Positions 421-63,096 of a stretch of 64,000 nucleotides of DNA are shown in pieces; position 1 is the first letter of the stretch, and every line of letters begins with the position of its first letter. A program made the translations under genes and the position numbers. The DNA lies in the IMG/VR virus record IMGVR_UViG_3300040801_001224, positions 62,001-126,000 of that record. One strand, written 5' to 3'. Below the pieces are notes generated by a model. That model saw only the letters and a list, made by a program, of their open reading frames with translations. It did not search any database and was not told the DNA's origin.

Positions 421-2429
421 TAACTACTCCCCAAGTTTTCTTCAATTTGATCAGGAAATACTCTGACTTCCTTAACACAATTTAATAGCTGTACAAATTT
501 GCCACCTTGGAATTTACTTGTAAGGGACAATACGTAGTAAAGTCCATTTATAACATTACCTTTAGCATTTTCATTTACATTATAAAGACCCGTGTTTTCG
601 TCATAAAGACCAGGTGGCAGTAGTCTGAACGCAACCATTGGCGGACTGTCAACAAATTGTATTTCCCTTCCACTTGTATCGTCAGCAGTTGGGCCATTGT
701 CAGCAAGTCCTTGGAAAGCAAATGGGTTTGATAGTCTTTCTTTTGATTGCCCAGCAAGCTCTAGTCTATTGAAATCAACAGTGTCAGTTGAGAATCCCTT
801 GCCCAACCAATCTGGATCACCTTTAATGTCCAATTCAATTTTAATTAGGTCACCGCTTTGCATTGATTGTGACAGCAACGAGTTAAAGAATGATCTATCC
901 CCAGTTGATGTTGATTCTAAGTTATGCATCATACCATCTGGATTTTTTCCTGTTGATGCGAGTATTTCTGTTTCAGTCCCGCCATTTTCTAAACAACTAG
1001 CGATGAGTTTTTCTGTTCTCTTCTTATCCCTTTCCTGTTCGTCAGCAATGTTGATGTTTTCTGCCCCTTGTGCATTTTGGGCATCTTTATTCCTAAGTGT
1101 AGATGTAAATGGAATTAGGAATGCTGTATTAAAGTTTAAATCAAAGTCATTCACTTGATCGTTTCGTCCAGTGAAAATGTAATCATATCTTTTTCTGACT
1201 AGATCTTGTATTTCATCCATCCTTTCTTTTGATGTTTGCTTCGTCACAATGTTCTGGTTGTCGATATATAATTTTGGTGTATCGTGTTTCATAATATAAT
1301 ACACGATTAATTTGCTGTAGTCTCCCGATTCAGTATTTATGTCAACTGGGTCAGATAATTCTCCACTCTCAAGTATTTCAGGTTTTAGTACATTTAAATT
1401 TGATTGCGGTGGAAATCCATTTTCCGGATTTATAGGGACCACTTTAGTGAGTACCTTAAACATTGGCACCTTAGTGACCTTATCACATCCCTTTTTGTCG
1501 TTTATGCGAACTATTTCCCTAACTTCTTCAAATAATCCCGTAACTGACATGACATTGTTTATCACATCAATGACTGGTGTCCCTAATGCCCAAGATAAAG
1601 TCTTCTTACCACCGGCAGAACCGTCACTAAACCTATCGGTATTAGTGGGTGTGTTTGGTTCAATTTTTTTAGTATTGAAGTCTAAATTTTTTAAATTTGG
1701 ATCCACATGTATGTAGTATTTGTTTTTGTAAATCCTCTTGTTAGCGTTTGACTTATTTGTGTTTACGTTAGGATCAGCACCCACGTTCATCAACTTCTCT
1801 AACTCGTTGAACACAGCACCGGCACTGTCAATATCTCCTTCAGGTTGGAAGTCCTGCGGTAGTGTGCCGTGTGAATCCGAGTATCCAAGGTCGTCATAAA
1901 TCAATGCTTCAAAGTCATATGATGCACCACTTGAATTAACATTCAGTGAAACATTTTTAACAATGATTGGATAGATCCATCTGCGATCAAGCCTTGTTGG
2001 CAACGACTCGGGTTGTGATCTACCCAAGAAAGATAGGTCCATCAAATATGAACATTTAACAAAGGAATCATTCCCAAGTACCTGTGCCGCCAATTTCATT
2101 TCATCAAAAAAGGTAGCAGAGCTTGGTTCAATGATTGTGAAATTCAAAACTGTTGCCGTTCCGGTTTTTGTTTCTTCGGAATGTGAAGGATAATATTGTA
2201 ACTCAACATTGTCAATAGCAACTCGACTTGCTCCTGTTTCAGCAAGTAGGATTGGATCTGTTACTGAGTTAGGTTTTGAGTTAGGATCGATAGTTGAAAT
2301 ATCTGTATATCCACCATTAAACCCTGGAACTTGGACTCTACCCTTTTCACGAAACATAAAGAATCGGAAATGGTAAGTTGGACTATCCACTGAGTCAAGA
2401 ATATTATCGGTAATTTTGTCAAATGCCAT
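420..2429 (-). CDS. Large baseplate hub / tail-associated protein (gp27-like position)
   Basis: Long ORF between gp53-like and gp5-like genes; C-terminal IKIELDIKGDPDWLG and GLYYVLSLTSKFQGGKFVQ resemble hub proteins. Likely start MAFDKI at 2429, since the ORF-track start overlaps the upstream gene. Confidence 0.5.
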   Translation of the reverse strand: MAFDKITDNILDSVDSPTYHFRFFMFREKGRVQVPGFNGGYTDISTIDPNSKPNSVTDPILLAETGASRVAIDNVELQYYPSHSEETKTGTATVLNFTIIEPSSATFFDEMKLAAQVLGNDSFVKCSYLMDLSFLGRSQPESLPTRLDRRWIYPIIVKNVSLNVNSSGASYDFEALIYDDLGYSDSHGTLPQDFQPEGDIDSAGAVFNELEKLMNVGADPNVNTNKSNANKRIYKNKYYIHVDPNLKNLDFNTKKIEPNTPTNTDRFSDGSAGGKKTLSWALGTPVIDVINNVMSVTGLFEEVREIVRINDKKGCDKVTKVPMFKVLTKVVPINPENGFPPQSNLNVLKPEILESGELSDPVDINTESGDYSKLIVYYIMKHDTPKLYIDNQNIVTKQTSKERMDEIQDLVRKRYDYIFTGRNDQVNDFDLNFNTAFLIPFTSTLRNKDAQNAQGAENINIADEQERDKKRTEKLIASCLENGGTETEILASTGKNPDGMMHNLESTSTGDRSFFNSLLSQSMQSGDLIKIELDIKGDPDWLGKGFSTDTVDFNRLELAGQSKERLSNPFAFQGLADNGPTADDTSGREIQFVDSPPMVAFRLLPPGLYDENTGLYNVNENAKGNVINGLYYVLSLTSKFQGGKFVQLLNCVKEVRVFPDQIEENLGSS

Positions 2430-5235: not shown

Positions 5236-6250
5236 CAAAACTTTTTTCAAGAAAGCCGCTTGTTTTACTGATCTGCATTATGGCCTTAAAAATAACTCGA
5301 GGCAACACAATAACGATTGTGAAGAGTTTATCAAGTGGTTTATAGAGAAAGCGAAAGAAGAAGGATGCGAAACATGTATCTTCCTTGGTGATTTTCACCA
5401 CCATCGCGCTTCTGTGAACGTGTCTACACTCAACTATATGGTGAGTGGCCTTAAGATGCTCAGTGAAGGATTTGAAAATGTATATTTCATTACTGGTAAT
5501 CACGATTTGTTTTACAGAGAGAAACGTGAGATACACTCGGTTCCAATGGGTGAGCTCTTTGACAATATCCATATGATTGATGAAGTAATGGTTGAAGGCG
5601 ATGTTGCCATTGTCCCTTGGTTAGTTGGTGATGAGCATAAAGAAATTGTAAAGCTTAAAACCAAATACATGTTTGGACACTTTGAGATTCCTGGCTTTAA
5701 ACTTAACGCAATGATTGAGATGCCAGACCATGGTGGCTTAAAGCGCAATATGTTTAAGCACCAGGATTATGTTTTCTCAGGCCATTTCCATAAAAGACAG
5801 TGGGGTGACAATGTTCATTATATCGGCAACCCCTTTGGCCATAATTATTCTGATGTATGGGACTTCGATAGAGGTTGTATGATATTGGAATGGGGTAGTG
5901 AGCCACAATACATTAACTGGGAAGATGGTCCCAAGTATGTAAATGTTTTATTGTCAGACCTTGCAGAACATCCTGATGATTATTTACTTGAAAATGCCAA
6001 CGTTAAAGTTGTCATTGATTTACAATTATCATATGAAGAAGTAAATTATATGAAGGAACTTTTCTCTAGTCAGTATAATATACGTGAACTAAAAATGGTT
6101 CCACAAAAGAATGAAGACTTAACAAATGCCTCAGAGACAGATATTGCCTTTGAGACTGTTGATCAAATTGTTGTAGATCAGATCACTGCTATGGAATCTG
6201 AAAAGTACAGCACACAAACACTTTTAACAATTTATAGAAACTTGGACTAA
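5228..6250 (+). CDS. gp47: Recombination endonuclease subunit (Mre11/SbcD-like)
   Basis: Metallophosphoesterase motifs DLHYG, LGDFHH, ITGNHD, GHFE, SGHFH. Confidence 0.95.
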   Translation: MSSKTFFKKAACFTDLHYGLKNNSRQHNNDCEEFIKWFIEKAKEEGCETCIFLGDFHHHRASVNVSTLNYMVSGLKMLSEGFENVYFITGNHDLFYREKREIHSVPMGELFDNIHMIDEVMVEGDVAIVPWLVGDEHKEIVKLKTKYMFGHFEIPGFKLNAMIEMPDHGGLKRNMFKHQDYVFSGHFHKRQWGDNVHYIGNPFGHNYSDVWDFDRGCMILEWGSEPQYINWEDGPKYVNVLLSDLAEHPDDYLLENANVKVVIDLQLSYEEVNYMKELFSSQYNIRELKMVPQKNEDLTNASETDIAFETVDQIVVDQITAMESEKYSTQTLLTIYRNLD

Positions 6251-8007
6251 TGCTTAAATTTAAAACGTTAACTATTAAGAACTTTATGTCTGTTGGTAAT
6301 ATTACCCAGACTATACAGCTTGACACTGGCGAATTAAACCTTGTACTAGGTGAGAACTTAGACTTAGGTGGTGACGATAACCGGAACGGTGTTGGTAAGT
6401 CGAGTATCCTAAATGCTATTTCATATGTATTATATGATGGCGCATTAACAAAGATACGAAAAGACAACCTCGTCAATAAAACTAATTCTAAAGACATGTA
6501 TGTTACGCTTGACTTTGAAAAAGATGGCACGGAGTATCGATTAGAGCGTGGACGTAAGCCAAACACCTTAAAGTTTTTTATTGATGGAAATGAATTACAA
6601 GAAGATAAGAATGAGGCGCAGGGTGACATGCGTGTCACGCAGACTGTGGTTGAAGAGGTTATCGGAATCAGTCACACAATGTTTAAAAATATTGTTGGTC
6701 TTAATACTAACAGTGAACCGTTCTTGGGTATGCGAGCTAATGACCAGCGTGACGTTATTGAGCAGTTACTTGGCATTACAAAGTTGTCCGAGAAAGCTGA
6801 AAGCCTTAAAATACTATTAAAGAACACAAAGGATTTAATTAAAGACGAAGAGTATCACATTAAAGCTATTAGTGACGCCAACGAAACTATTGAAAAAAAC
6901 ATTAAATCGCTAGATATGAAGTCTAATGTGTGGGTTAAAAATAACGCTGATGACATTGAAAGCACAGAACTTGCTATTGATGAATTAAAGAAAGTAGACA
7001 TTGATGCTGAAATTGAAGCCCATAAACAAGCAGGTTTAGCACAAGAATACCAACGTAAACATAAAGGGTATGATAAAGAAATTAATAGTTTTAAGCGTGA
7101 AATAACCCTATTAGAAAAGGCTATATCACGTTCCGAAGGGCAATTACACACAACTAATGACAAGAAATGCCACACATGTGGACATGCTCTTGATGACGAC
7201 AAACATCAGGAATTACACGAAAAGATAGAAACAGAACATAAGAAAGACAAGGGCAAACTAACTGATGTTAGAGTCCATTTAAACGAAGTTATCAGTAAAC
7301 AGGATGCCCTGGAAGAAGTAGAAATGCCCGAAACTTTCTACGAAACAGTAGACGAAGCGTACTCACATAGAAGCAAAATAGAGTCTTTAACGGCTCATTT
7401 AACAGGCCTTAAGAACGCACAAAACCCTTATGTTGAGCAAATAGAATCACTAAAAGAAGACGGTCTTAAGACTATTGACTACAGTAGTTTAAATGATTTA
7501 GTCATGCTCAGGGACCACCAGGAGTTCTTATTAAGGCTATTGACAAATAAAGATAGCTTTGTGCGTAAGCGTATTATTGATCAAAATCTTAATTATTTAA
7601 ACGCCAGACTTGAACATTACCTAATAAAAGTAGGTTTGCCGCACGAAGTTACGTTTGTTAGTGATTTAAGTGTGGAAATATCAGAGCATGGTCGTAACCT
7701 AGACTTTGATAATTTATCACGCGGTGAAAAGACACGACTTATCCTTAGTTTAAGTTGGGCATTCCGTGATGTATTTGAAAGCTTAAATGGACGTATCAAT
7801 ATACTGTTTATTGACGAGTTAATGGACAACGGTTTAGATACAAGCGGTGTAGAAAATGCCCTACGTGTCCTAAAACATATTACACGTGATCTAAATAAGA
7901 GCATATTCCTAATCTCACATCGTGAAGAACTTATTGGTCGAGTTGATAACATTGTAAAAGTTATTAAGACTGGTGGCTTTACTACTATTGAAGATTATGA
8001 TGAATGA
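6250..8007 (+). CDS. gp46: Recombination ATPase subunit (Rad50/SbcC-like)
   Basis: KNFMS, Walker A NGVGKS, CHTC zinc hook, signature LSRGE, Walker B LFIDE, ISH. Confidence 0.95.
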   Translation: MLKFKTLTIKNFMSVGNITQTIQLDTGELNLVLGENLDLGGDDNRNGVGKSSILNAISYVLYDGALTKIRKDNLVNKTNSKDMYVTLDFEKDGTEYRLERGRKPNTLKFFIDGNELQEDKNEAQGDMRVTQTVVEEVIGISHTMFKNIVGLNTNSEPFLGMRANDQRDVIEQLLGITKLSEKAESLKILLKNTKDLIKDEEYHIKAISDANETIEKNIKSLDMKSNVWVKNNADDIESTELAIDELKKVDIDAEIEAHKQAGLAQEYQRKHKGYDKEINSFKREITLLEKAISRSEGQLHTTNDKKCHTCGHALDDDKHQELHEKIETEHKKDKGKLTDVRVHLNEVISKQDALEEVEMPETFYETVDEAYSHRSKIESLTAHLTGLKNAQNPYVEQIESLKEDGLKTIDYSSLNDLVMLRDHQEFLLRLLTNKDSFVRKRIIDQNLNYLNARLEHYLIKVGLPHEVTFVSDLSVEISEHGRNLDFDNLSRGEKTRLILSLSWAFRDVFESLNGRINILFIDELMDNGLDTSGVENALRVLKHITRDLNKSIFLISHREELIGRVDNIVKVIKTGGFTTIEDYDE

Positions 8008-8044
8008 TATAAATATAGTAGAGGACAATAAGGAAACCGATCTA

Positions 8045-8251
8045 ATGAGCATTAGACCAAATAACTGTGATAGCTGTGGTCGTGTGCCAAGCTTCGTTCA
8101 AGACAGAAATGGGCATTTTGTTATTTGTATTTGCGGAGAACGATCACAGCACATGAAGACAAGAAAAGAATCCATTCTAATGTGGAATCATGACCACACT
8201 GGCTTTAAACAGCCAGAATGGACTAAGGATGCCAATGACCATAACTGGTGA
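8045..8251 (+). CDS. Small Zn-ribbon protein, Lar (restriction alleviation)-like
   Basis: CDSCG...CICG...ESILMWN; likely start MSIRPN after AAGGA. Confidence 0.45.
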   Translation: MSIRPNNCDSCGRVPSFVQDRNGHFVICICGERSQHMKTRKESILMWNHDHTGFKQPEWTKDANDHNW

Positions 8252-8767
8252 TTAGAATTTATACTTAGATTCCCAACCTTCAGTAAGGGCTCTCTTGTTA
8301 GGGAGCCTTTTCTTTTGGATACGTGATATGCTGTACTTCTTTTCTAGTTCCGTTTCCGGCTTTAATTTGAACTTCATGTTAGCGATCATACCATTATAAT
8401 AAGCTGGTGTGCCATCCGGGAGAGTAGCTCTGAGTACGTCTTCAACAATCTGTAATTCTACTTCCCTATAATGTAGTGAAGCTTTGGATTCGTGAAGTGA
8501 TTCAATTAGGAATGTGAATTGTTCTTTTCCCCTCTTTTCAATCTCCTCCTTCAACCATTTGGACGAGCTACAATAAGACTTCCAATCAGATTCCTTGATT
8601 ACACGTTTGCGGTTCTTGCGACCTTTCACTATTTTACGGCGAGTACTGAAGAAGAATTTTTTTCCAATATACTGCATGCCAGTTTCATTATCAATTATTC
8701 GATAGATGAAACCAACCCAATCTTCTATATTAAATTCTCTGGGATATTCCCAATGACCCATATCCAT
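8252..8767 (-). CDS. GIY-YIG nuclease, T4 endonuclease II (DenA)-like
   Basis: GFIYRIIDNETGMQYIGKKFF, ESDWKSYCSSS, REVELQ..DVL, YYNGMI. Confidence 0.75.
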   Translation of the reverse strand: MDMGHWEYPREFNIEDWVGFIYRIIDNETGMQYIGKKFFFSTRRKIVKGRKNRKRVIKESDWKSYCSSSKWLKEEIEKRGKEQFTFLIESLHESKASLHYREVELQIVEDVLRATLPDGTPAYYNGMIANMKFKLKPETELEKKYSISRIQKKRLPNKRALTEGWESKYKF

Positions 8768-8861
8768 ATATTGTATTTATGTGACCAAGAAATAGTGGTG
8801 CTCTGTTCCTGGCACAGATATATACCGGTATAATTACTACAAAAATATTACTAAATAATAC

Positions 8862-8890
8862 TTGACAAAACACATTTTATACCGTATAAT
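8862..8890 (+). promoter_or_regulatory. sigma70-type promoter with no ORF downstream
   Basis: TTGACA (8862-8867), 17 bp, TATAAT (8885-8890). Confidence 0.85.
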
Positions 8891-8896
8891 AGATAT

Positions 8897-9775
8897 ATCA
8901 TAAAAGGAATTCCTGGTTTTATTGTTTCCAGGCCAAAAAAAATTACTCAACGCCCATTCAAAATATATAGACAATTTAAAACGCACTAACAAGTGGCATC
9001 GTGGCAGGAAGGTAAAAGTCCTGCACCTTACGAGGCCGGTACAGGGATGTATGCGGTCGGATGTGTTTGGTAGCCACCTACGTCAGGAACTACGTAGTAA
9101 ATATAAGGACCGACCAACACTACACAAGTAAACCGGCTGAGGAGCCGACAAGAATTGCCACACAGACACAGACAACTGATAACTTGTGTGAGTACTTGAG
9201 TAGATCGAGGTCAGAAAGATTATGCTCTGGCAGAAAAAGAGTTAGGTCCGGCCTAACGCCAACATAGGGCTATATAGCTTTTAGAACTCCAACACAGGGT
9301 TATATAGTTTGCGGCATTTTCCGTCACAACGGAATCGGAGTCACTAATGGGATGATGGTGCCCGCCCAGCGTAGTATTAGCGTTTGTACTGTAGTCGTGG
9401 TGTTATGGAGTGGCACACTGCATTGAAATGTGCTTTTTTTAAACTTCGCCGGCAACGGCGAAGCTATGGCTTCTACAATGAAATGAATAGGTCATTAGGT
9501 CATATGATAAAAATCTTCTTTCCCCTTTAAGTATAATCGAATCTTTAGAACAAAGCCGATAGGCGAAGTGATAAAGATGAAGATTAAGGCCTTTAGGCCT
9601 TTTCACTATTACCCATAATAATGTTAATGACTCTGAACTACTTCGTGTGTTATAGCGCACGATGATGTTCTGATTAAAAATATCAAGACCTTTCAGAGAT
9701 CTTTCCGACAAAAAAAATTGAGTTAAATGGGAATCGTCACCCGGCGATTAAGCCGGGATCAGATTGGCTGAGGAG
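8897..9775 (+). ncRNA. Candidate large structured non-coding RNA (alternatively a replication-origin region)
   Basis: About 0.88 kb with no credible CDS in an otherwise gene-dense genome; many nested inverted repeats, e.g. CTTCGCCG-GCAA-CGGCGAAG at 9444-9463; follows a consensus promoter. Confidence 0.45.
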
Positions 9776-10291
9776 CTATTTCCACTCACGACGTGAGTAT
9801 AATCTTTTGATGTTCTTAGCGAGGTCTTCGTCAGTAATTGCTTCTGCAAAGTCTTTGTTGATATGCATGTTTACAGCGACCACGTCATCACCGACGCTAT
9901 CGAATGAAACGATACCGCTGAATTTCTTGTAAACTGTGGTAATGAAAGCACCTATGCGTAGTTCTAAGCTACCACGGATTTCTTCTTCAAAGTCAAAGGT
10001 GTCTCTTGGCGCATGGGCGATCCATTTGATTTCGCCTTTATTGATTGCCACATATGTGGTTAGTTCATCACCCTTTAGTTGCTTAGTATATATCTTACCA
10101 GTATAGCCTTCAATGTTATAGGCATCATGCTTGACGTTAAATTTATCGTCTGCAAATGGTTGCCATTCAACATGTTGGAAGTCAAACAAGATTGAAGTCT
10201 GTTGTACCTTATTAAACTTTGGGTACTGTGTCCATGCTTCAACACTTGTTTGTGGACTTTTCTCTACTATAATGTCTGTTATGTCTGTCAT
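9776..10291 (-). CDS. Hypothetical protein
   Basis: 171-aa ORF continuing the minus-strand operon; no recognised motif. Confidence 0.6.
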   Translation of the reverse strand: MTDITDIIVEKSPQTSVEAWTQYPKFNKVQQTSILFDFQHVEWQPFADDKFNVKHDAYNIEGYTGKIYTKQLKGDELTTYVAINKGEIKWIAHAPRDTFDFEEEIRGSLELRIGAFITTVYKKFSGIVSFDSVGDDVVAVNMHINKDFAEAITDEDLAKNIKRLYSRREWK

Positions 10292-10294
10292 ATG

Positions 10295-10528
10295 TTAATC
10301 ACCCAATAGTTCAGGTGCTCCACTTTCTATTCGTCTGTATTTACTAACTCTTTTTGCAATTCTCTGCCGTTGCCTAAAACTCATCCCCCATGCATCCGAC
10401 CAACTAATCCTTGCAAAGTAGACTAAATCAATTATCTCATCTTCTAGAGCTAATTGCTCGTCTTTAAAACCATTAATAAACTTAACGATCTTTTCGGGGT
10501 CAGAGTTTACAAGGACTCTGTAAAAAAA
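10295..10528 (-). CDS. -1 frame extension of the gp26-like gene (gp51/GT-chaperone-like C-terminal module)
   Basis: Open frame FFYRVLVNSDPEKIVKF...ISWSDAWGMSFRQRQRIAKRV...LLGD* with no start codon in its first ~50 codons; begins at a T TTT TTT slippery heptamer (10522-10528). Confidence 0.6.
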   Translation of the reverse strand, partial: FFYRVLVNSDPEKIVKFINGFKDEQLALEDEIIDLVYFARISWSDAWGMSFRQRQRIAKRVSKYRRIESGAPELLGD

Positions 10529-11364
10529 GTTGCTGGATTAAAATCAATTGGAACACTCCAGCTATGTTCACAGTTACTACATGTGGCTTCGTAATCTTTC
10601 TTTATGCCAATGTTATTTATTCTATCTAGAACGTCTTGTATTTTTTTAATATCATTACGTCCAATGTTATTTATAAATTCTGCAATTTGTTTATGATTGG
10701 TAACGTCAATCGTCTCTTCTTCAGTAGCACCTTCTTTATAAACTCTCATTACACAATGTGAAACAAGTTCAAAGTTTAGTTTTGATAATGAACTAATTGA
10801 ATCGCCAATAATTTTGATCTTTTGCTCTTCACTAAAGCTAGGATTCTCAATATTACGTATAACATTGTTCTGTTCAAATGCTTTCTTAATAGCAACTAAA
10901 CTGTCGTCAAAGTTATAAGGGCGAATGAACGCTGTCAATCCATTATCCAAATTAACAGGATATTCTGCATCTAGTTTCTCTGCCGATGTTAATGTCATAT
11001 CCATAGATAATGCAAATGAATTATCTTCTCCACACTCTGGACATTTAGCGTTAATATCTAACTCATCACCATAACTAGCGTGGCGTATACCAACTACAAT
11101 TGCGTCAATGTCGTTTGTTAATAAATTGTCAACATTCTTAATTGCTGGCACACAAGATGCGATAACATCTTTAATTGCCTTGCCATTTAATAATGCGTCT
11201 GGATTACGGAATAAAACTTCGTCAGCGGCTGTCATTGGTAAGATACCAACTTCGTCATTACCTGTTAATTCTACAACGCTATCGTCATAAAACTTACCGC
11301 CTGAAGGCAATGAAACGTATAATTGCTCTTTTCTGTAAAACTGTTGTAATGGGTTGTTGCTCAT
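10507..11364 (-). CDS. Baseplate hub assembly protein, gp26-like
   Basis: LPSGGKFY, ILPMTAADE, DIDAIVVGIRHASYG, CPECG and CSNC; likely start MSNNPL at 11364. Confidence 0.75.
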   Translation of the reverse strand: MSNNPLQQFYRKEQLYVSLPSGGKFYDDSVVELTGNDEVGILPMTAADEVLFRNPDALLNGKAIKDVIASCVPAIKNVDNLLTNDIDAIVVGIRHASYGDELDINAKCPECGEDNSFALSMDMTLTSAEKLDAEYPVNLDNGLTAFIRPYNFDDSLVAIKKAFEQNNVIRNIENPSFSEEQKIKIIGDSISSLSKLNFELVSHCVMRVYKEGATEEETIDVTNHKQIAEFINNIGRNDIKKIQDVLDRINNIGIKKDYEATCSNCEHSWSVPIDFNPATFFTESL

Positions 11365-11388
11365 ATTAAATACCCTTTTAATCTGTGT

Positions 11389-11431
11389 GATAAATACAAT
11401 AAGCACTCATGCTAATGTATGAGTATTTATC
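11389..11431. promoter_or_regulatory. Face-to-face pair of late-promoter motifs serving the tape-measure (+) and gp26-like (-) genes
   Basis: GATAAATA at 11389-11396 (+) and TATTTATC at 11424-11431 (GATAAATA on -). Confidence 0.6.
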
Positions 11432-11458: not shown

Positions 11459-13909
11459 ATGGCCGAACAATTTGACCAACGTACAGCAGAAGAGCTAGGC
11501 GATTTAAATAAAAACTTAAAAGAGTTAATAGACAAACTTGGATCTTCTTCTGGTGGAGCCACTAAATCCACGTCTTCTAGTGGTATGTCTGCCCTAGCTA
11601 AAGCCGCAGAAGAAGCGGCCAAGCATACTAATGAAGCTACTGAAGAAAAGAAGAAAGAAACAGAGCAAATCAAAGAGATTCATAGAGAAACAGCCAAGCG
11701 CATTGAAGTTACACGTGACTTAACTGATGAAACCAAGAAGTACTTGGAAGAGCATGGTACGATGACTCAGAAGCTTGCTATGATGAATAATAGTTTTGAT
11801 GAGCAAGCATTGGCTTCAGTCAATAAATCTTTTGCTTCAAACTTGGGTCCATTGGGAAAGGGGTTCGAAGATTTTGCTAAAAATAACGCAGTATTAGGCA
11901 CGTCCATAGCAGTTGCAGGCATTGCTGTTGGTGCTTTCGCTGGCAAGGTAATGAATGTCTTAGAATCATTTGATTCATTAGCCAAGAGTGGTGTAACAGT
12001 GGGTGGCGGTTTTGCAGGACTTATGACTGCGTCGGCAGGCCTAAACATGTCAATGGATCAGTTTGCTAGTTTAGCAACAGAACATGCTAGAACAATTAAT
12101 AAATTTGGCATACAAGAATTCCAAGCAGGAGCATTAGGTATACGTGATAGCATGATGGGGTTAGGTTTAACTACATCTGAAACAAGTGAATACTTAGCTG
12201 ATTACTTGGAAACTCAACGCTTAACAGGTGCGATGGCACAGATGTCTGGAAATCAACAAGCACAGGCGGCACAAAGATTAATGAGTCAGACAGATTCATT
12301 AGCAGTAGCATTCGGTGCGTCTAGGGAGGCGGTACTTGACGGTGTTGTGAAAGCGTATGACGATCCAATGATACAGGCAACACTAAGGGGGCTTCCACAA
12401 GGAGCCAAAGAAGCGTTTGACAAGTCGATGGCATTCTTCAGCGCATCTGTGCCGGCAATGGCTGATAGTATCCAGGAACTAATGGGTTCAGCTATTCCTC
12501 AAATGACCGACGCCTACCAGAACGCAATGCAGGCTGGCGTGCCTGGCGTAGCAACTGCTATGATGGAATTCACTAATAATATTAAAGCTGGCATGGATTC
12601 AGAAGAAGCAAGAAATAAATTGCTCAGCAAAATGGCAACGCAGGATACACATCGTTTAAGAATACTTGCTTCTGCAGGTGACGAAAATGCTAAGTCGATG
12701 TTAGCACAGGTGGAACAAGCAAAGCAGGCAATGGAAGCACGTAAACTTGAGACTGAGGCAGAAAAGAAAGCAAGACTTGAGAATCAGAAATCAGCATCCG
12801 GTGTAAGGCAGGCATTTGAACAATTGGGCACATTTGGTGATAAGGTAATGGCTGGATTGCTTGGGTCTTTAGGTGGATCAGGCGGTGTTGAAGCAGGCGT
12901 TAAGAAATTAAGTGGAGTAGTGTCTGATTTTGCCAACTGGCTAGGTGATACAGCAATCCCTTCAGCAATTAAGTTTGGAGAAGCCATGGGGCCTGTTGTA
13001 TCAGGGTTAGGATTAGTAGGTTCAGCGATTGGATCTGTTTTTGGCGTTTTCCGTGATATTGGTGTTGGTCTTGGTGAAGTTGCTGGCCATATTGTTATGA
13101 ATTTTGACGATATAGGGGAAAACTTTAAACACCTTATTAAGGGAATGGGTCTTGCCTTACTTGATATCTTGCCAACCGGTATGTCAGATGGAATTCTTAG
13201 TTTTTTCAATGGCGTTACTGAGATGTTTTCTGGTGTGTCTAGAGCAATTGATAATCTTATGGATGGCGGTAGTATCATAGGCTTCCTAGGTGAAATGTTT
13301 GATGGGTTGTTGCAGATGGTAACCTACCCAATAACAGCTCTAATTGATTATATTGGTGGCACTGATATTTCAGGTATGTTGTCTGAGTTTGGGTTCACTG
13401 GGATGATAATGGAAGGTATTGGTAATCTGTTTGACAAAATAGTTGACACTATTACTAGTATTGAGTTGCCGTCAGTATCAGACCTCATAGGTGGTGAATG
13501 GCTTGGGTTTGGTGGTAATGAAGAAGCAGACGATAATGCTCGATTAAGAATGTTAGCAAGTGCTGGTGACCTTGACGCAAGGGCACAATTAGAACAGCAA
13601 GATTCACCAGGACTGCTCAATAGAATAGGCAACTTCTTTGGCTCAGACGATCAAGCAGAAGTGTTAAGCCCTGCGGCATCGACAGAATTAGCCACAACAA
13701 GCGAAAAAATAAGCCAAATAACACAAGTGTCGGAAAAACAGGACACTGTTGTGACGGAGCAGATAAATACAAACAGAGAAGTAGTTCAATCATCTGGTGA
13801 ACAAATTGCTGTATTAAGAGAAGTAGCGGCTGGGATTAAATCCCTGGCTGACGGCAATAAGAAGATTACAACTGCTATTAAGGAGAACGGCACAACGTTC
13901 TTACGTTAA
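11459..13909 (+). CDS. Probable tape measure protein
   Basis: 816 aa, Ala/Gly-rich, helical with amphipathic repeats; divergent from the gp26-like chaperone gene and upstream of portal. Confidence 0.65.
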   Translation: MAEQFDQRTAEELGDLNKNLKELIDKLGSSSGGATKSTSSSGMSALAKAAEEAAKHTNEATEEKKKETEQIKEIHRETAKRIEVTRDLTDETKKYLEEHGTMTQKLAMMNNSFDEQALASVNKSFASNLGPLGKGFEDFAKNNAVLGTSIAVAGIAVGAFAGKVMNVLESFDSLAKSGVTVGGGFAGLMTASAGLNMSMDQFASLATEHARTINKFGIQEFQAGALGIRDSMMGLGLTTSETSEYLADYLETQRLTGAMAQMSGNQQAQAAQRLMSQTDSLAVAFGASREAVLDGVVKAYDDPMIQATLRGLPQGAKEAFDKSMAFFSASVPAMADSIQELMGSAIPQMTDAYQNAMQAGVPGVATAMMEFTNNIKAGMDSEEARNKLLSKMATQDTHRLRILASAGDENAKSMLAQVEQAKQAMEARKLETEAEKKARLENQKSASGVRQAFEQLGTFGDKVMAGLLGSLGGSGGVEAGVKKLSGVVSDFANWLGDTAIPSAIKFGEAMGPVVSGLGLVGSAIGSVFGVFRDIGVGLGEVAGHIVMNFDDIGENFKHLIKGMGLALLDILPTGMSDGILSFFNGVTEMFSGVSRAIDNLMDGGSIIGFLGEMFDGLLQMVTYPITALIDYIGGTDISGMLSEFGFTGMIMEGIGNLFDKIVDTITSIELPSVSDLIGGEWLGFGGNEEADDNARLRMLASAGDLDARAQLEQQDSPGLLNRIGNFFGSDDQAEVLSPAASTELATTSEKISQITQVSEKQDTVVTEQINTNREVVQSSGEQIAVLREVAAGIKSLADGNKKITTAIKENGTTFLR

Positions 13910-62078: not shown

Positions 62079-62453
62079 GGCGTTCGGATAAGGGCTGGTA
62101 TCCCGGAGAACTCACTGGCTGAAGAAGCTATAGACCTCCTTAAGTGCCATTGCGTAAAGCATAAATCAGTTCGCCGTTTTAATTCGATGAAGTAATTTAA
62201 TGATACTGTGGACGCCAGTTCGAATCTGGCCATCTCCACCAAATCTATGGGGATGAATTAGGTTTCGACAGGGTATACTGAGAATTATGGAGAATCAGTC
62301 AATGCTAAAGGCTGTGAGGATTGGGAGTAACACCTTTAATGGTGCTCGGTCGAAGAAGCAAAAAAATAATTGAAAATGATGAAATTTTCGCATTAGCGGC
62401 ATAGACCGTTAACGGGGTTTTACACCGTCTTCCTTGTTATCAAAAGACGGTGT
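62079..62453 (+). ncRNA. ssrA: Circularly permuted (two-piece) tmRNA; outer boundaries approximate
   Basis: T-arm GCCAG-TTCGAAT-CTGGC plus CATCTCC-A-CCA ends at 62241; 7-nt spacer; GGGGATG starts at 62249 (G3.U pair); tag ORF ENDEIFALAA* at 62372-62404. Confidence 0.9.
62422..62453. terminator. Hairpin at the tmRNA 3' end, overlapping the convergent gene stop
   Basis: ACACCGTCTT (62422-62431) / AAGACGGTGT (62444-62453). Confidence 0.6.
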
Positions 62454-63096
62454 CTTTATGTATGCTATAGTGTTGGCGTAACCCGTTCACTGACTTTTCT
62501 TCTCCGCAAATAATACAAGAACATTTTATTCTGCTACTATTATTTTTAGAAATTTTTTCTCTGGTAGTTTTGGATAATTTTCTTCCCTTCCCTTGCCCAG
62601 TGCGATCTATGTTTCTTATCTTCGGGTCATGCATTGGGTTGTTGTTTTTTAATCGTTCCGAAGCTTGCCGGCGTTGTTCGTTAGTCCATTCGTACCCTCC
62701 ACCACCTGGTCTAGATACTCCTTTATTTGACTCAGATATTTTTCTTTTGTGTTCTTCAGAAAAAGATCGTCCAGTATTGGCCTGACTTATTGTTTTTTTG
62801 TGTTCGTCAGATATTACCCTCGGTCCACCATCTGTTCCGTTTTCTATAGCAAGATTTGCCCATTCTTTTGATTCTACGATTTGGTTTAGCTTTGAAAAAA
62901 GTGTAGAAAATCTTTTTAGCTTTTCTAAGCTTTTGAATTCCTTATACCACAAGGTATCGATAAATTTGCCGTGTTTCTTGATGTGACGTAACCAGTATTT
63001 GCCCGATCCGGCATATTTAGTCGGCTCATTTTTTGTCTTGCCGAAATATTTGAGCCCGGTTTTCTGGTGCTGTTTTATATATAGATAAATACTCAT
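62440..63096 (-). CDS. GIY-YIG (Seg-like) homing endonuclease with NUMOD3-like repeats
   Basis: IYLYIKQHQKTGLKYFGKT, YAGSG, WANL..ENG..GG, SDEHKKTIS / SEEHKRKIS; likely start MSIYLY at 63096 after AGGAG. Confidence 0.8.
   Translation of the reverse strand: MSIYLYIKQHQKTGLKYFGKTKNEPTKYAGSGKYWLRHIKKHGKFIDTLWYKEFKSLEKLKRFSTLFSKLNQIVESKEWANLAIENGTDGGPRVISDEHKKTISQANTGRSFSEEHKRKISESNKGVSRPGGGGYEWTNEQRRQASERLKNNNPMHDPKIRNIDRTGQGKGRKLSKTTREKISKNNSSRIKCSCIICGEEKSVNGLRQHYSIHKDTVF

What the first reader, a model, noticed from the sequence alone, without database searches (positions are those of the whole stretch)
8862..9775. Promoter-driven, ORF-free 0.9 kb island packed with nested helices: candidate large ncRNA or origin
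Seen: a perfect sigma70 promoter points into ~880 bp lacking a credible CDS. Pairings found by eye: TACTCAA 8944/TTGAGTA 9196; GTGGCA 8993/TGCCAC 9156; GCAGGA 9004/TCCTGC 9019; GCCGGT 9035/ACCGGC 9132; GGTCGG 9055/CCGACC 9110; CTACGT 9078/ACGTAG 9092; GTTAGG 9241/CCTAAC 9252; TTCCGT 9319/ACGGAA 9329; an 8-bp GCAA-tetraloop hairpin at 9444-9463; AAGGCC/GGCCTT at 9586; CCCGGC/GCCGGG at 9740. The 8944-9202 helices nest into a multibranch domain. Known: phages carry large structured RNAs of unknown function (GOLLD, ROOL classes), and T4 origins are primed by promoter transcripts. Inference: either a large ncRNA or a transcription-primed origin; GCGAAGC at 9459-9465 is a known stable DNA mini-hairpin sequence.
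Basis: partly seen in the sequence, partly recalled or inferred. Interest (0 to 1): 0.65.

Follow-up and report, generated by a model that had tools for sequence, protein, structure and literature searches.

The report
Large structured phage RNA gene
The ORF-free island is a gene for a roughly 710-base, intricately folded non-coding RNA driven by a phage early promoter; it belongs to a widespread, almost undescribed RNA family of giant T4-like phages whose function is unknown.

Summary
The promoter and the ORF-free stretch are real. The window comes from a 328 kb T4-like jumbo phage. Positions ~8897-9605 (+) encode a structured RNA, and 9606-9775 is not shown to belong to it.

Stability alone is weak evidence (MFE z -1.5 to -2.2). 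The comparative evidence is strong:
- Homologues sit at the same place, downstream of gp47/gp46 and beside a small SegE-like GIY-YIG gene, in dozens of fetched loci.
- A core pattern matches more than 120 IMG/VR contigs.
- Six core helices, including an H-type pseudoknot, pair in 90-93% of cells against 35-46% in slid controls.
- G-U outnumbers A-C 68 to 13, so the + strand is the RNA.

The window RNA matches nothing in Rfam. In one sister clade the 5' domain of the family is Rfam Polynucleobacter-1 (RF01718, function unknown). Pseudomonas phage PA5oct carries three paralogues, one annotated from RNA-seq as 'putative lncRNA' ncRNA004.

The transcription-primed origin idea gets no support, because most family members have no promoter of their own.

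Function is unknown. My best guess is a trans-acting, tertiary-folded, partner-binding RNA. A working partnership with the adjacent GIY-YIG nuclease is possible but not obligatory.

The parts
8862..8890 (+). Sigma-70 early-class promoter: -35 TTGACA at 8862-8867 and -10 TATAAT at 8885-8890. The start site inferred from it is about 8897.
   Evidence: 12 of 12 matches, 17-nt spacer. It is conserved in L075, L081, L003 and L076. It is one of about 77 identical-type promoters in the genome. The start site is inferred, not measured.
8897..9605 (+). Predicted ncRNA gene of about 710 nt. Both ends are inferred from the promoter and from the last conserved hairpin.
   Evidence: nhmmer and CM homologues. 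RNAalifold gives 125 pairs, 55 of them with compensatory change, in 5 clade-1 sequences. No conserved ORF. G-U:A-C is 68:13.
8912..8932 (+). 5' hairpin, CCUGG/CCAGG, with an 11-nt loop UUUUAUUGUUU that is invariant in clade 1. It is followed by an A-run and AUUACUC (8942-8948).
   Evidence: The stem covaries (CCUGG, CCAG, CCGG, GCGG) while the loop stays invariant, and the hairpin is duplicated in L075.
8993..9097 (+). Clade-1 5' domain. Helix 8993-8997/9073-9077 encloses hairpin 9004-9024. Hairpin 9078-9097 follows.
   Evidence: GUGGC/GCCAC, GUAGC/GCUAC, GCAGC/GCUGC and GUAGU/ACUAC give 25/25 paired cells.
9220..9267 (+). Core element A. Helix A1 is 9220-9224/9263-9267 and helix A2 is 9228-9229/9260-9261. 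The near-invariant GCUCUG...GAAA.AGA...CAAC lies here, with an inserted hairpin at 9241-9257.
   Evidence: The A1 pairs show UA/GC/CG/AU types across clades.
9268..9309 (+). Core hairpin B, 9268-9278/9299-9309. By eye it looks like a 26-nt direct repeat.
   Evidence: repeat D1; 8-9 of 10 pairs carry compensatory changes.
9312..9368 (+). Pseudoknotted core. Helix X is 9312-9317/9358-9364, with an inserted hairpin at 9319-9334. Pseudoknot helix Y is 9348-9351/9365-9368. The invariant CCGCC is at 9362-9366.
   Evidence: Helix X is 95-100% paired, with GC/AU/UA/CG types. Helix Y was not in model R2 and is 98.5% paired in 33 sequences, with GC/CG/UA and AU/GC/GU types.
9444..9463 (+). Terminal 8-bp hairpin with a GCAA tetraloop, followed by CUAUGG.
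   Evidence: The loop is GCAA, GUAA, UUCG, GAAA or GCAA in the homologues, and the stem covaries.
9534..9605 (+). 3' tail module. It holds a small GNRA-capped hairpin (GCC-GAUA-GGC, 9555-9564) inside a longer stem, then the last hairpin AAGGCC-UUUA-GGCCUU (9586-9601) followed by UUC.
   Evidence: The same module occurs in clades 2-5 (GC-GCAA/GAUA/GUAA-GC, then a strong hairpin). The last hairpin covaries as AGGCC/GGCCU, AGUCC/GGACU and AGUUC/GAACU.
9606..9775 (.). Spacer with a hairpin at 9740-9760. It is not shown to belong to the RNA and probably holds 3'-end signals of the converging ORF171.
   Evidence: No sequence conservation beyond the last RNA hairpin in A1/A2.
8252..8767 (-). Neighbour: a small SegE-like GIY-YIG nuclease gene (171 aa), transcribed divergently from the RNA.
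   Evidence: Pfam PF19835, E 7e-36. Orthologues lie next to the RNA's 5' end in clades 1-4.
6250..8007 (+). Synteny anchor: gp46 (SbcC-like recombination endonuclease subunit).
   Evidence: 54% identity to PA5oct gp46.
9776..10291 (-). Neighbour: ORF171, a conserved hypothetical protein found only in the window's clade. It converges on the RNA.
   Evidence: 7 relatives among 5.8 billion proteins.

Best explanation
Positions ~8897-9605 (+) are a stand-alone gene for a large (~710 nt), tertiary-structured non-coding RNA. Host sigma-70 RNA polymerase transcribes it early in infection from the promoter at 8862-8890.

It is a divergent member of a big family of phage RNAs (about 430-720 nt; the syntenic PA5oct copy appears longer). 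In PA5oct-related jumbo T4-like phages these lie downstream of gp47/gp46, at the 5' side next to a small SegE-like GIY-YIG nuclease gene.

Shown: the family shares two hairpins (A and B), an H-type pseudoknot around an invariant CCGCC, a terminal tetraloop hairpin, and a 3' tail with a GNRA-capped hairpin and a closing hairpin.

Inferred: the RNA acts in trans as a folded molecule that binds a partner, most likely a protein of the DNA-end-processing or nuclease module it travels with. It does not act as an mRNA, a cis-regulator or a replication primer. I put about 0.3 on this partner-binding mode. The overall confidence figure refers to 'structured ncRNA gene of this family'.
For: - Promoter.
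- Homologues at the syntenic place.
- Covariation on a MAFFT-only alignment of 19 sequences: 90.5% of cells paired against 36-44% when the partner is slid; score 0.636 against 0.06-0.16; 0 of 500 shuffles reach it.
- On 33 sequences: 92.7% against 35-46%. The pseudoknot helix, which was not in the model, is 98.5% paired with three pair types.
- Clade-1 full length: 125 pairs, 55 compensated.
- G-U 68 against A-C 13.
- GNRA/UUCG loop swaps.
- No conserved ORF.
- G+C is raised over the RNA.
- Model R1, built only from the window's clade, finds three PA5oct loci (E 4e-14, 2e-5, 6e-5). One lies inside ncRNA004, annotated from RNA-seq as a putative lncRNA.
- In the window, downstream genes converge on the RNA, so it cannot be a 5' leader.
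Against: - No transcript data exist for this phage.
- PA5oct ncRNA004 was a low-abundance transcript, 0.02-0.08% of phage reads.
- MFE z is only -1.5 to -2.2.
- Both RNA ends are inferred.
- Nothing identifies the partner or the activity.
- In clades 3 and 4 the RNA directly follows the GIY-YIG ORF, so there it could be a 3' UTR element rather than a separate gene.
Confidence: 0.85

Rival explanations
1. The RNA is a functional partner of the adjacent GIY-YIG nuclease, which lacks a DNA-binding domain. It would be a targeting, scaffolding or inhibitory subunit, by analogy with HEARO/omega RNA and IscB.
For: - The GIY-YIG gene sits at the RNA's 5' side in clades 1-4. Among the 79 pattern-found loci, nearly all with enough upstream DNA have it ending 171-265 nt before the core. 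The gp46-GIY distance and the genes downstream of the RNA vary.
- The link survives an inversion of the GIY-YIG gene in clades 1 and 2.
- The protein is 142-185 aa, and the GIY-YIG domain covers nearly all of it.
- Weinberg 2010 already noted that the motif lies downstream of one gene family.
Against: - PA5oct has three RNA copies and no such protein.
- The protein family is widespread in T4-like phages (530 phage records). In Methylophilales phage Melnitz no RNA follows it.
- The adjacency may be plain inherited synteny: identity between GIY-YIG orthologues (about 35% between clades) falls with phage divergence, as gp46 identity does.
- The conservation profile of 68 clade-4 RNAs shows no constant-length hypervariable guide-like segment; this was read by eye and not tested.
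Confidence: 0.1
2. The RNA is a catalytic RNA, or an RNA-only assembly of the GOLLD/ROOL/OLE kind. It would work through its own fold, with the invariant junction and pseudoknot nucleotides forming an active site or multimer contacts.
For: Size of 430-720 nt, a pseudoknotted core with invariant unpaired and paired nucleotides, GNRA-capped hairpins kept as GNRA across clades, and phage origin.
Against: No similarity to any Rfam ribozyme or large RNA. The terminal hairpin loop swaps GNRA for UUCG in some members, so that loop is not a conserved tertiary contact. No activity or assembly data exist.
Confidence: 0.15
3. It is a transcription-primed replication origin, like T4 oriF/oriG or ColE1 RNA II. 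The promoter transcript would form a persistent R-loop that primes leading-strand synthesis.
For: A strong promoter points into non-coding DNA. The site lies beside recombination and replication nuclease genes (gp46/47). There is an AT-rich stretch 3' of the core at 9470-9580. PA5oct has three dispersed copies, as T4 has several origins.
Against: - Most family members have no promoter of their own and directly follow an ORF.
- The conserved features are RNA-fold features: G-U pairs on one strand, tetraloops and a pseudoknot.
- The promoter is of the early sigma-70 type, not a MotA-type middle promoter.
- The genome's cumulative GC skew shows no special turning point beyond the local change in gene orientation.
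Confidence: 0.04
4. It is a cis-acting part of the GIY-YIG or operon transcript (3' UTR stabiliser, processing or terminator element) that acquired its own promoter in this clade. Alternatively, it is the conserved homing target of the GIY-YIG endonuclease and has no function with it.
For: In clades 3 and 4 the RNA starts within a few nt of the GIY-YIG stop codon and ends in a strong hairpin. From my knowledge of T4 SegB, which is not a tool result, free-standing homing endonucleases are known to sit next to conserved RNA genes, for example in the T4 tRNA cluster.
Against: A 430-720 nt pseudoknotted RNA is far more than a 3' end needs. In the window, clade 2 and PA5oct it stands alone behind its own promoter-like site or promoter. 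The endonuclease is nearly universal here rather than sporadic.
Confidence: 0.1

Closest known systems
Polynucleobacter-1 RNA motif (Rfam RF01718; Weinberg et al. 2010, PMC2864571)
   Same: It is the 5' domain of the clade-4 members of this family. L053 8238-8374 scores 111 bits, immediately upstream of the pseudoknot core at 8397-8505. Its authors noted that it lies downstream of one gene family, GOS11034, with possible homology to P-SSM2 locus PSSM2_218. I take that family to be the small GIY-YIG, but I did not check this. Its function is unknown.
   Different: The motif is only 141 nt and was built from 16 examples. It was rated a likely cis-regulatory candidate (lower-case 'y' in the paper's table), and no purified phage was known to carry it. 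The window RNA does not match it, even at E <= 10, nor do clades 2, 3 and 5 or the PA5oct copies at the gathering score. The pseudoknot core, the terminal hairpin and the 3' tail are not part of any Rfam model.
PA5oct ncRNA004 'putative lncRNA' (Lood et al. 2020, PMC7318152)
   Same: A model built only from the window's clade hits inside it, at 246391-246505. It shares element A, hairpin B and the CCGCC pseudoknot region, and it has a promoter-like site (TTGACA-17-TAAACT). It was seen by RNA-seq.
   Different: It was described only as a transcribed region without an ORF. No structure, family or function was given. It is not at the syntenic position. The syntenic PA5oct copy (76.3 kb) is annotated as tiny CDSs, and the best-scoring copy (13.1 kb) is unannotated.
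GOLLD, ROOL, OLE and raiA: large ornate bacterial or phage ncRNAs
   Same: These are large, multi-helix, covariation-supported RNAs of unknown biochemical function. GOLLD and ROOL are often phage-borne.
   Different: There is no sequence or structure homology (no Rfam hit). No tRNA genes lie nearby in the window. Here the linkage is to gp46/47 and a GIY-YIG gene.
HEARO / omega RNA with IscB
   Same: A structured RNA persistently adjacent to a small nuclease gene. This resemblance is a lead only.
   Different: The nuclease family differs (GIY-YIG, not HNH/RuvC). No guide segment was identified. The RNA and the protein each occur without the other.
T4 oriF/oriG and ColE1 RNA II
   Same: A promoter transcript running into non-coding DNA. 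RNA II is also a structured RNA of about 550 nt.
   Different: The promoter is not conserved across the family. The conserved features are tertiary-fold features. There is no evidence of initiation.

Membership tests
Rfam RF01718 Polynucleobacter-1 | Scores at or above the family's gathering score (37 bits) against the covariance model | tested here: not met
   There is no hit in window 8700-9900, even at E <= 10, and none in the whole window at the gathering score. Clade-4 relatives score 90-120 bits.
Rfam RF01718 Polynucleobacter-1 | Lies downstream of a GOS11034-family gene (Weinberg 2010 supplement) | tested here: inconclusive
   The window RNA is adjacent to a small SegE-like GIY-YIG gene, but that gene is divergent, not upstream on the same strand. 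The same-strand arrangement holds in clades 3 and 4. I infer that GOS11034 is this GIY-YIG family; I did not check it.
gp46-linked, GIY-YIG-adjacent large phage RNA family (defined here) | Core helices A1, A2, B and X, pseudoknot Y around an invariant CCGCC, and the terminal hairpin | tested here: met
   All are present at 9220-9368 and 9444-9463. CM R2 scores the window at 94 bits, though the window was in its seed. R1, built from the window's clade, finds clades 2 and 3 at E 1e-11 to 1e-3.
gp46-linked, GIY-YIG-adjacent large phage RNA family (defined here) | Synteny: same strand as gp46, downstream of it, with the 5' side next to the small GIY-YIG gene | tested here: met
gp46-linked, GIY-YIG-adjacent large phage RNA family (defined here) | 3' tail module: a GNRA-capped mini-hairpin inside a stem, then a closing hairpin | tested here: met
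   Window 9555-9564 and 9586-9601. Equivalents occur in clades 2-5.
GOLLD / ROOL / HEARO / OLE / raiA / group I and II introns / RNase P / tmRNA / 6S | Match to the family's Rfam covariance model | tested here: not met
   The best hits in the region have E 1.8-8 and score 9-20 bits, far below their gathering scores. The only real hit in the window is a permuted tmRNA at 62181-62404.
T4-type transcription-primed origin (oriF/oriG) | A promoter (MotA-dependent middle type in T4) directly upstream, as an obligatory part of the element | tested here: not met
   The window promoter is a -35/-10 early type. Clade 3 and 4 members have no room for a promoter, because the RNA begins at the stop codon of the upstream ORF.
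T4-type transcription-primed origin (oriF/oriG) | A persistent R-loop at a DNA-unwinding element, with initiation of DNA synthesis | not testable with these tools
   This needs replication mapping.
Expressed RNA (any ncRNA gene) | A discrete transcript detected | not testable with these tools
The only indirect support is PA5oct paralogue ncRNA004, seen by RNA-seq.

The most novel reading that the evidence does not exclude
The RNA is the RNA subunit of a ribonucleoprotein with the neighbouring GIY-YIG nuclease, which consists of a catalytic domain only. It would supply target recognition, tethering or control. This would be a GIY-YIG counterpart of RNA-dependent nucleases such as IscB with omega RNA, used by jumbo phages beside their gp46/47 recombination nuclease.
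Probability: 0.08. Interest if true: 0.92.

Novelty: new variant of a known kind. Interest (0 to 1): 0.72.

Why it matters
New large, pseudoknotted RNA classes are rare, and they have repeatedly led to new biochemistry; HEARO, for example, became the omega RNA of IscB.

This work ties together three loose ends:
- an orphan Rfam motif from 2010 (Polynucleobacter-1);
- an unexplained 'lncRNA' of the model jumbo phage PA5oct;
- an ORF-free island in an uncultured 328 kb phage.

Together they form one family of 430-720 nt phage RNAs that matches more than 120 IMG/VR contigs. The family has a defined core fold and a fixed genomic address next to DNA-end-processing nucleases.

PA5oct is cultivable and already has RNA-seq data, so the function is directly testable. 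The result also shows that several small 'hypothetical proteins' annotated in PA5oct (gp338-gp341) overlap an RNA gene and may not be real.

Tried and rejected
- DNA similarity to 50,697 phage records found nothing, in both near and distant modes.
- An 18-mer core scan of viral contigs gave only chance hits in GC-rich coding DNA (L070, L072).
- A gapped pattern scan of JGI metagenomes gave only the already known contig and one chance hit, L084.
- A word-based scan with ORF171 in viral contigs found nothing.
- Small-protein reading: no ORF is conserved among the five clade-1 sequences.
- Alternative genetic code: not pursued, because the neighbouring genes read normally in table 11 and indels between homologues are not multiples of three.
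- CsrA/RsmA sponge idea: GGA, AGGA and A.GGA motifs are not enriched against shuffles in 12 family members.
- Origin idea: cumulative GC skew follows gene orientation only.
- Extra copies in the window's genome: nhmmer and CM find only one.
- The genome-contig scan hit only MAG contigs of mixed taxa. The three I checked with the model that scored well or moderately look like binned phage DNA. This gives no host clue.
- Complex prediction, structure prediction and the large protein searches were not used, because no claim here rests on them.

Full report
**Where the window comes from.** The window is bases 62001-126000 of a 328,096 bp IMG/VR virus record with direct terminal repeats.

The flagged interval lies between these genes:
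- gp46, an SbcC-like recombination endonuclease subunit (6250-8007, +);
- a small SegE-like GIY-YIG gene (8252-8767, -);
- a conserved hypothetical ORF171 (9776-10291, -);
- the gp26 baseplate hub (10507-11406, -).

The nearest cultured relative by gp46 is Pseudomonas jumbo phage PA5oct, at 54% identity.

**Checking the observation.** A perfect TTGACA-17-TATAAT sits at 8862-8890. It is not a lone oddity. The genome holds about 77 such perfect promoters, nearly all on the + strand, and many share ACCACTT in the spacer. This is therefore the phage's early promoter class, read by host sigma-70 polymerase.

The interval has only short mechanical ORFs. None has a family hit, and none is conserved among homologues. 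G+C rises to 0.45-0.50 over 8950-9470, against about 0.35 around it.

Folding energy alone is unimpressive. The z-score is -1.5 for the + strand and -0.9 for the - strand of 8897-9480, and -2.2 for 8897-9605. The case rests on comparison.

**Homologues.**
- Collecting gp46 loci from IMG/VR and searching them with the interval gave one hit, L003. It has the same order: gp46, GIY-YIG (72% aa identity), the element, ORF171 (60%) and gp26.
- ORF171 has only seven relatives among 5.8 billion proteins. Their contigs supplied further copies: L073, L075, L081 and L076-L079.
- A covariance model of the 3' half, built from this clade alone (R1), then found weaker but significant matches. All were on the gp46 strand and downstream of gp46, in 15 more loci (clades 2 and 3), plus three places in PA5oct.
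- A second model of the core (R2) extended this to clade 4 and to about 45 of the loci searched.
- A still more divergent clade 5 (L055, L016, L027) shares the 3' tail module.

**Structure.** In the five distinct clade-1 sequences RNAalifold predicts 125 pairs, 55 of them with compensatory changes.

Across clades I tested a core of six helices on a MAFFT-only alignment of 19 sequences:
- 90.5% of cells pair, against 36-44% when the 3' partner is slid by 1-3 columns;
- the covariation score is 0.636, against 0.06-0.16 for the slid controls;
- none of 500 shuffles reaches the observed score.

On 33 sequences aligned to R2 the figures are 92.7% against 35-46%. In that alignment the pseudoknot helix (window 9348-9351 with 9365-9368) was not part of the model. 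It still pairs in 98.5% of cells, with GC/CG/UA and AU/GC/GU types.

G-U pairs outnumber A-C combinations 68 to 13 in the core and 16 to 4 in the other clade-1 helices. This identifies the + strand as the RNA and argues against a DNA-level structure.

Hairpin loops are RNA-typical. The terminal hairpin (9444-9463) carries GCAA, GUAA, UUCG or GAAA in different members. The mini-hairpin in the 3' tail stays GNRA (GAUA, GGAA, GCAA, GUAA).

Anatomy in the window:
- start at about 8897;
- a 5' hairpin with an invariant 11-nt loop (8912-8932);
- a clade-specific 5' domain (8993-9097);
- element A (9220-9267);
- hairpin B (9268-9309);
- the pseudoknot (9312-9368);
- the terminal hairpin (9444-9463);
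- the 3' tail, ending in the hairpin at 9586-9601.

Both ends are inferred.

Six are supported: 9004/9019, 9078/9092, 9241/9252, 9319/9329, 9444-9463 and 9586/9596. Four are not:
- 8944/9196;
- 8993/9156, whose covarying partner is 9073-9077;
- 9035/9132;
- 9055/9110, which lies in a lineage-specific insertion.

The 9740 hairpin is outside the conserved RNA.

**What is already known.** The window RNA matches no Rfam family, even at E <= 10, and clades 1-3 match none at the gathering score.

In clade 4 the 5' domain of the RNA is Rfam RF01718, Polynucleobacter-1, at 90-120 bits. This is a 141-nt orphan motif from Weinberg et al. 2010, built on 16 examples. The authors noted that it lies downstream of one gene family and that they had not found it in any purified phage.

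In PA5oct, one of the three copies lies inside ncRNA004, annotated from RNA-seq as a 'putative lncRNA'. The syntenic copy lies under tiny hypothetical CDSs, and the best-scoring copy lies in an unannotated gap of the terminal repeat. Two of the copies have a perfect TTGACA-17-TATAAT promoter and ncRNA004 has a weaker one, TTGACA-17-TAAACT.

I found no paper that describes the family, its core or its function.

**Genomic association.** The small GIY-YIG gene is at the RNA's 5' side in clades 1 and 2 (divergent) and in clades 3 and 4 (same strand). Among 79 pattern-found loci, nearly all with enough upstream DNA have it ending 171-265 nt before the core, which is essentially at the RNA's start. 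By contrast the gp46-GIY spacing (0.7-4.4 kb) and the genes downstream vary.

The protein is 142-185 aa, almost all of it GIY-YIG domain. The partnership is not obligatory:
- PA5oct has the RNA but no such protein.
- The protein family is common in T4-like phages (530 records).
- In Methylophilales phage Melnitz no RNA follows the protein gene.

**Mechanism.**
- Shown: this is a promoter-driven gene for a conserved, pseudoknotted RNA with no coding potential, standing alone in this phage because the downstream genes converge on it.
- Inferred: it acts in trans through its fold, most plausibly by binding a partner from the nuclease or recombination module it travels with (about 0.3).
- Alternatives: a ribozyme or RNA-only assembly (about 0.15), a subunit or regulator of the GIY-YIG nuclease (about 0.1), a cis 3' element or homing target (about 0.1), and a replication primer (about 0.04).

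The origin idea fails on the family-wide view. Most members have no promoter of their own, and what is conserved is RNA tertiary-fold detail. A CsrA-sponge idea was tested and dropped.

**Limits.**
- The E-values of my models are rough.
- R2's seed included the window and two PA5oct copies, so only the R1 results, the MAFFT-only counts and the out-of-model pseudoknot are independent.
- The 5' domain of the window RNA could not be shown to be homologous to Polynucleobacter-1.

**Verdict.** This is a real structured ncRNA gene. It is a new, divergent variant of a large phage RNA family that was previously glimpsed only as a 141-nt orphan motif and as one RNA-seq 'lncRNA'. Its function is open and is testable in PA5oct.

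Noticed in passing
window 62149-62495 (Rfam match 62181-62404, +): The phage carries a permuted (two-piece type) tmRNA. Rfam RF04321 scores 95.6 bits, and ARAGORN reads the tag peptide as ENDEIFALAA.
   Followed up: no
whole genome G000 (for example window 8862; genome 2542-321535): There are about 77 perfect TTGACA-N16-18-TATAAT promoters, all but two on the + strand. Many have a conserved ACCACTT in the spacer. This looks like a distinct phage early-promoter class.
   Followed up: partly
L085 11055-11867 (NC_071039.1 75704-76516): The tiny PA5oct CDSs gp338-gp341 (38-50 aa) overlap the syntenic RNA copy and its promoter. The start of gp339, ATGATTTTGGGTGC, recurs in the two other RNA copies, including ncRNA004. 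These CDSs are therefore probably not genes.
   Followed up: partly
L090 1210-2120 (NC_071039.1 12809-13721): An unannotated 0.9 kb gap in the PA5oct terminal repeat holds the best-scoring RNA paralogue (55 bits with R1), behind a perfect sigma-70 promoter.
   Followed up: partly
L091 about 1880-1930 and L085 about 12300-12360: Long AT-rich hairpins follow the PA5oct RNA copies. Two of them share a conserved loop, GAGTTGTAGTTTACGAAAACGA. They may be terminators or a repeated element of their own.
   Followed up: no
L075, about 1440-1500 (- strand): The 5' hairpin with the invariant loop UUUUAUUGUUU is duplicated in tandem, and the second copy has a different stem (GCGG/CCGC).
   Followed up: no
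window 8252-8767 (-) and relatives: PHROG 447, and many phage records, label this small SegE-like GIY-YIG family 'NAD synthetase'. Pfam and the conserved GIY/YIG, Glu and Asn positions indicate a nuclease.
   Followed up: partly
L214 and L216 (Haliscomenobacter sp. MAG, contigs of 148 and 183 kb): Two large contigs of one bacterial MAG each carry a strong copy of the RNA core (84-94 bits). They are probably jumbo-phage DNA binned with the MAG.
   Followed up: no
L055 7770-8260; L016 and L027 downstream of the GIY-YIG gene: A fifth, more divergent form of the RNA has a different core but the same 3' tail module. Neither model detected it.
   Followed up: no
window 7973-8251 (+): A 92-aa ORF between gp46 and the GIY-YIG gene has a weak, sub-threshold match to the Lar restriction-alleviation family (E 0.003). 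L003 has a 392-aa ORF of unknown function at this position.
   Followed up: no
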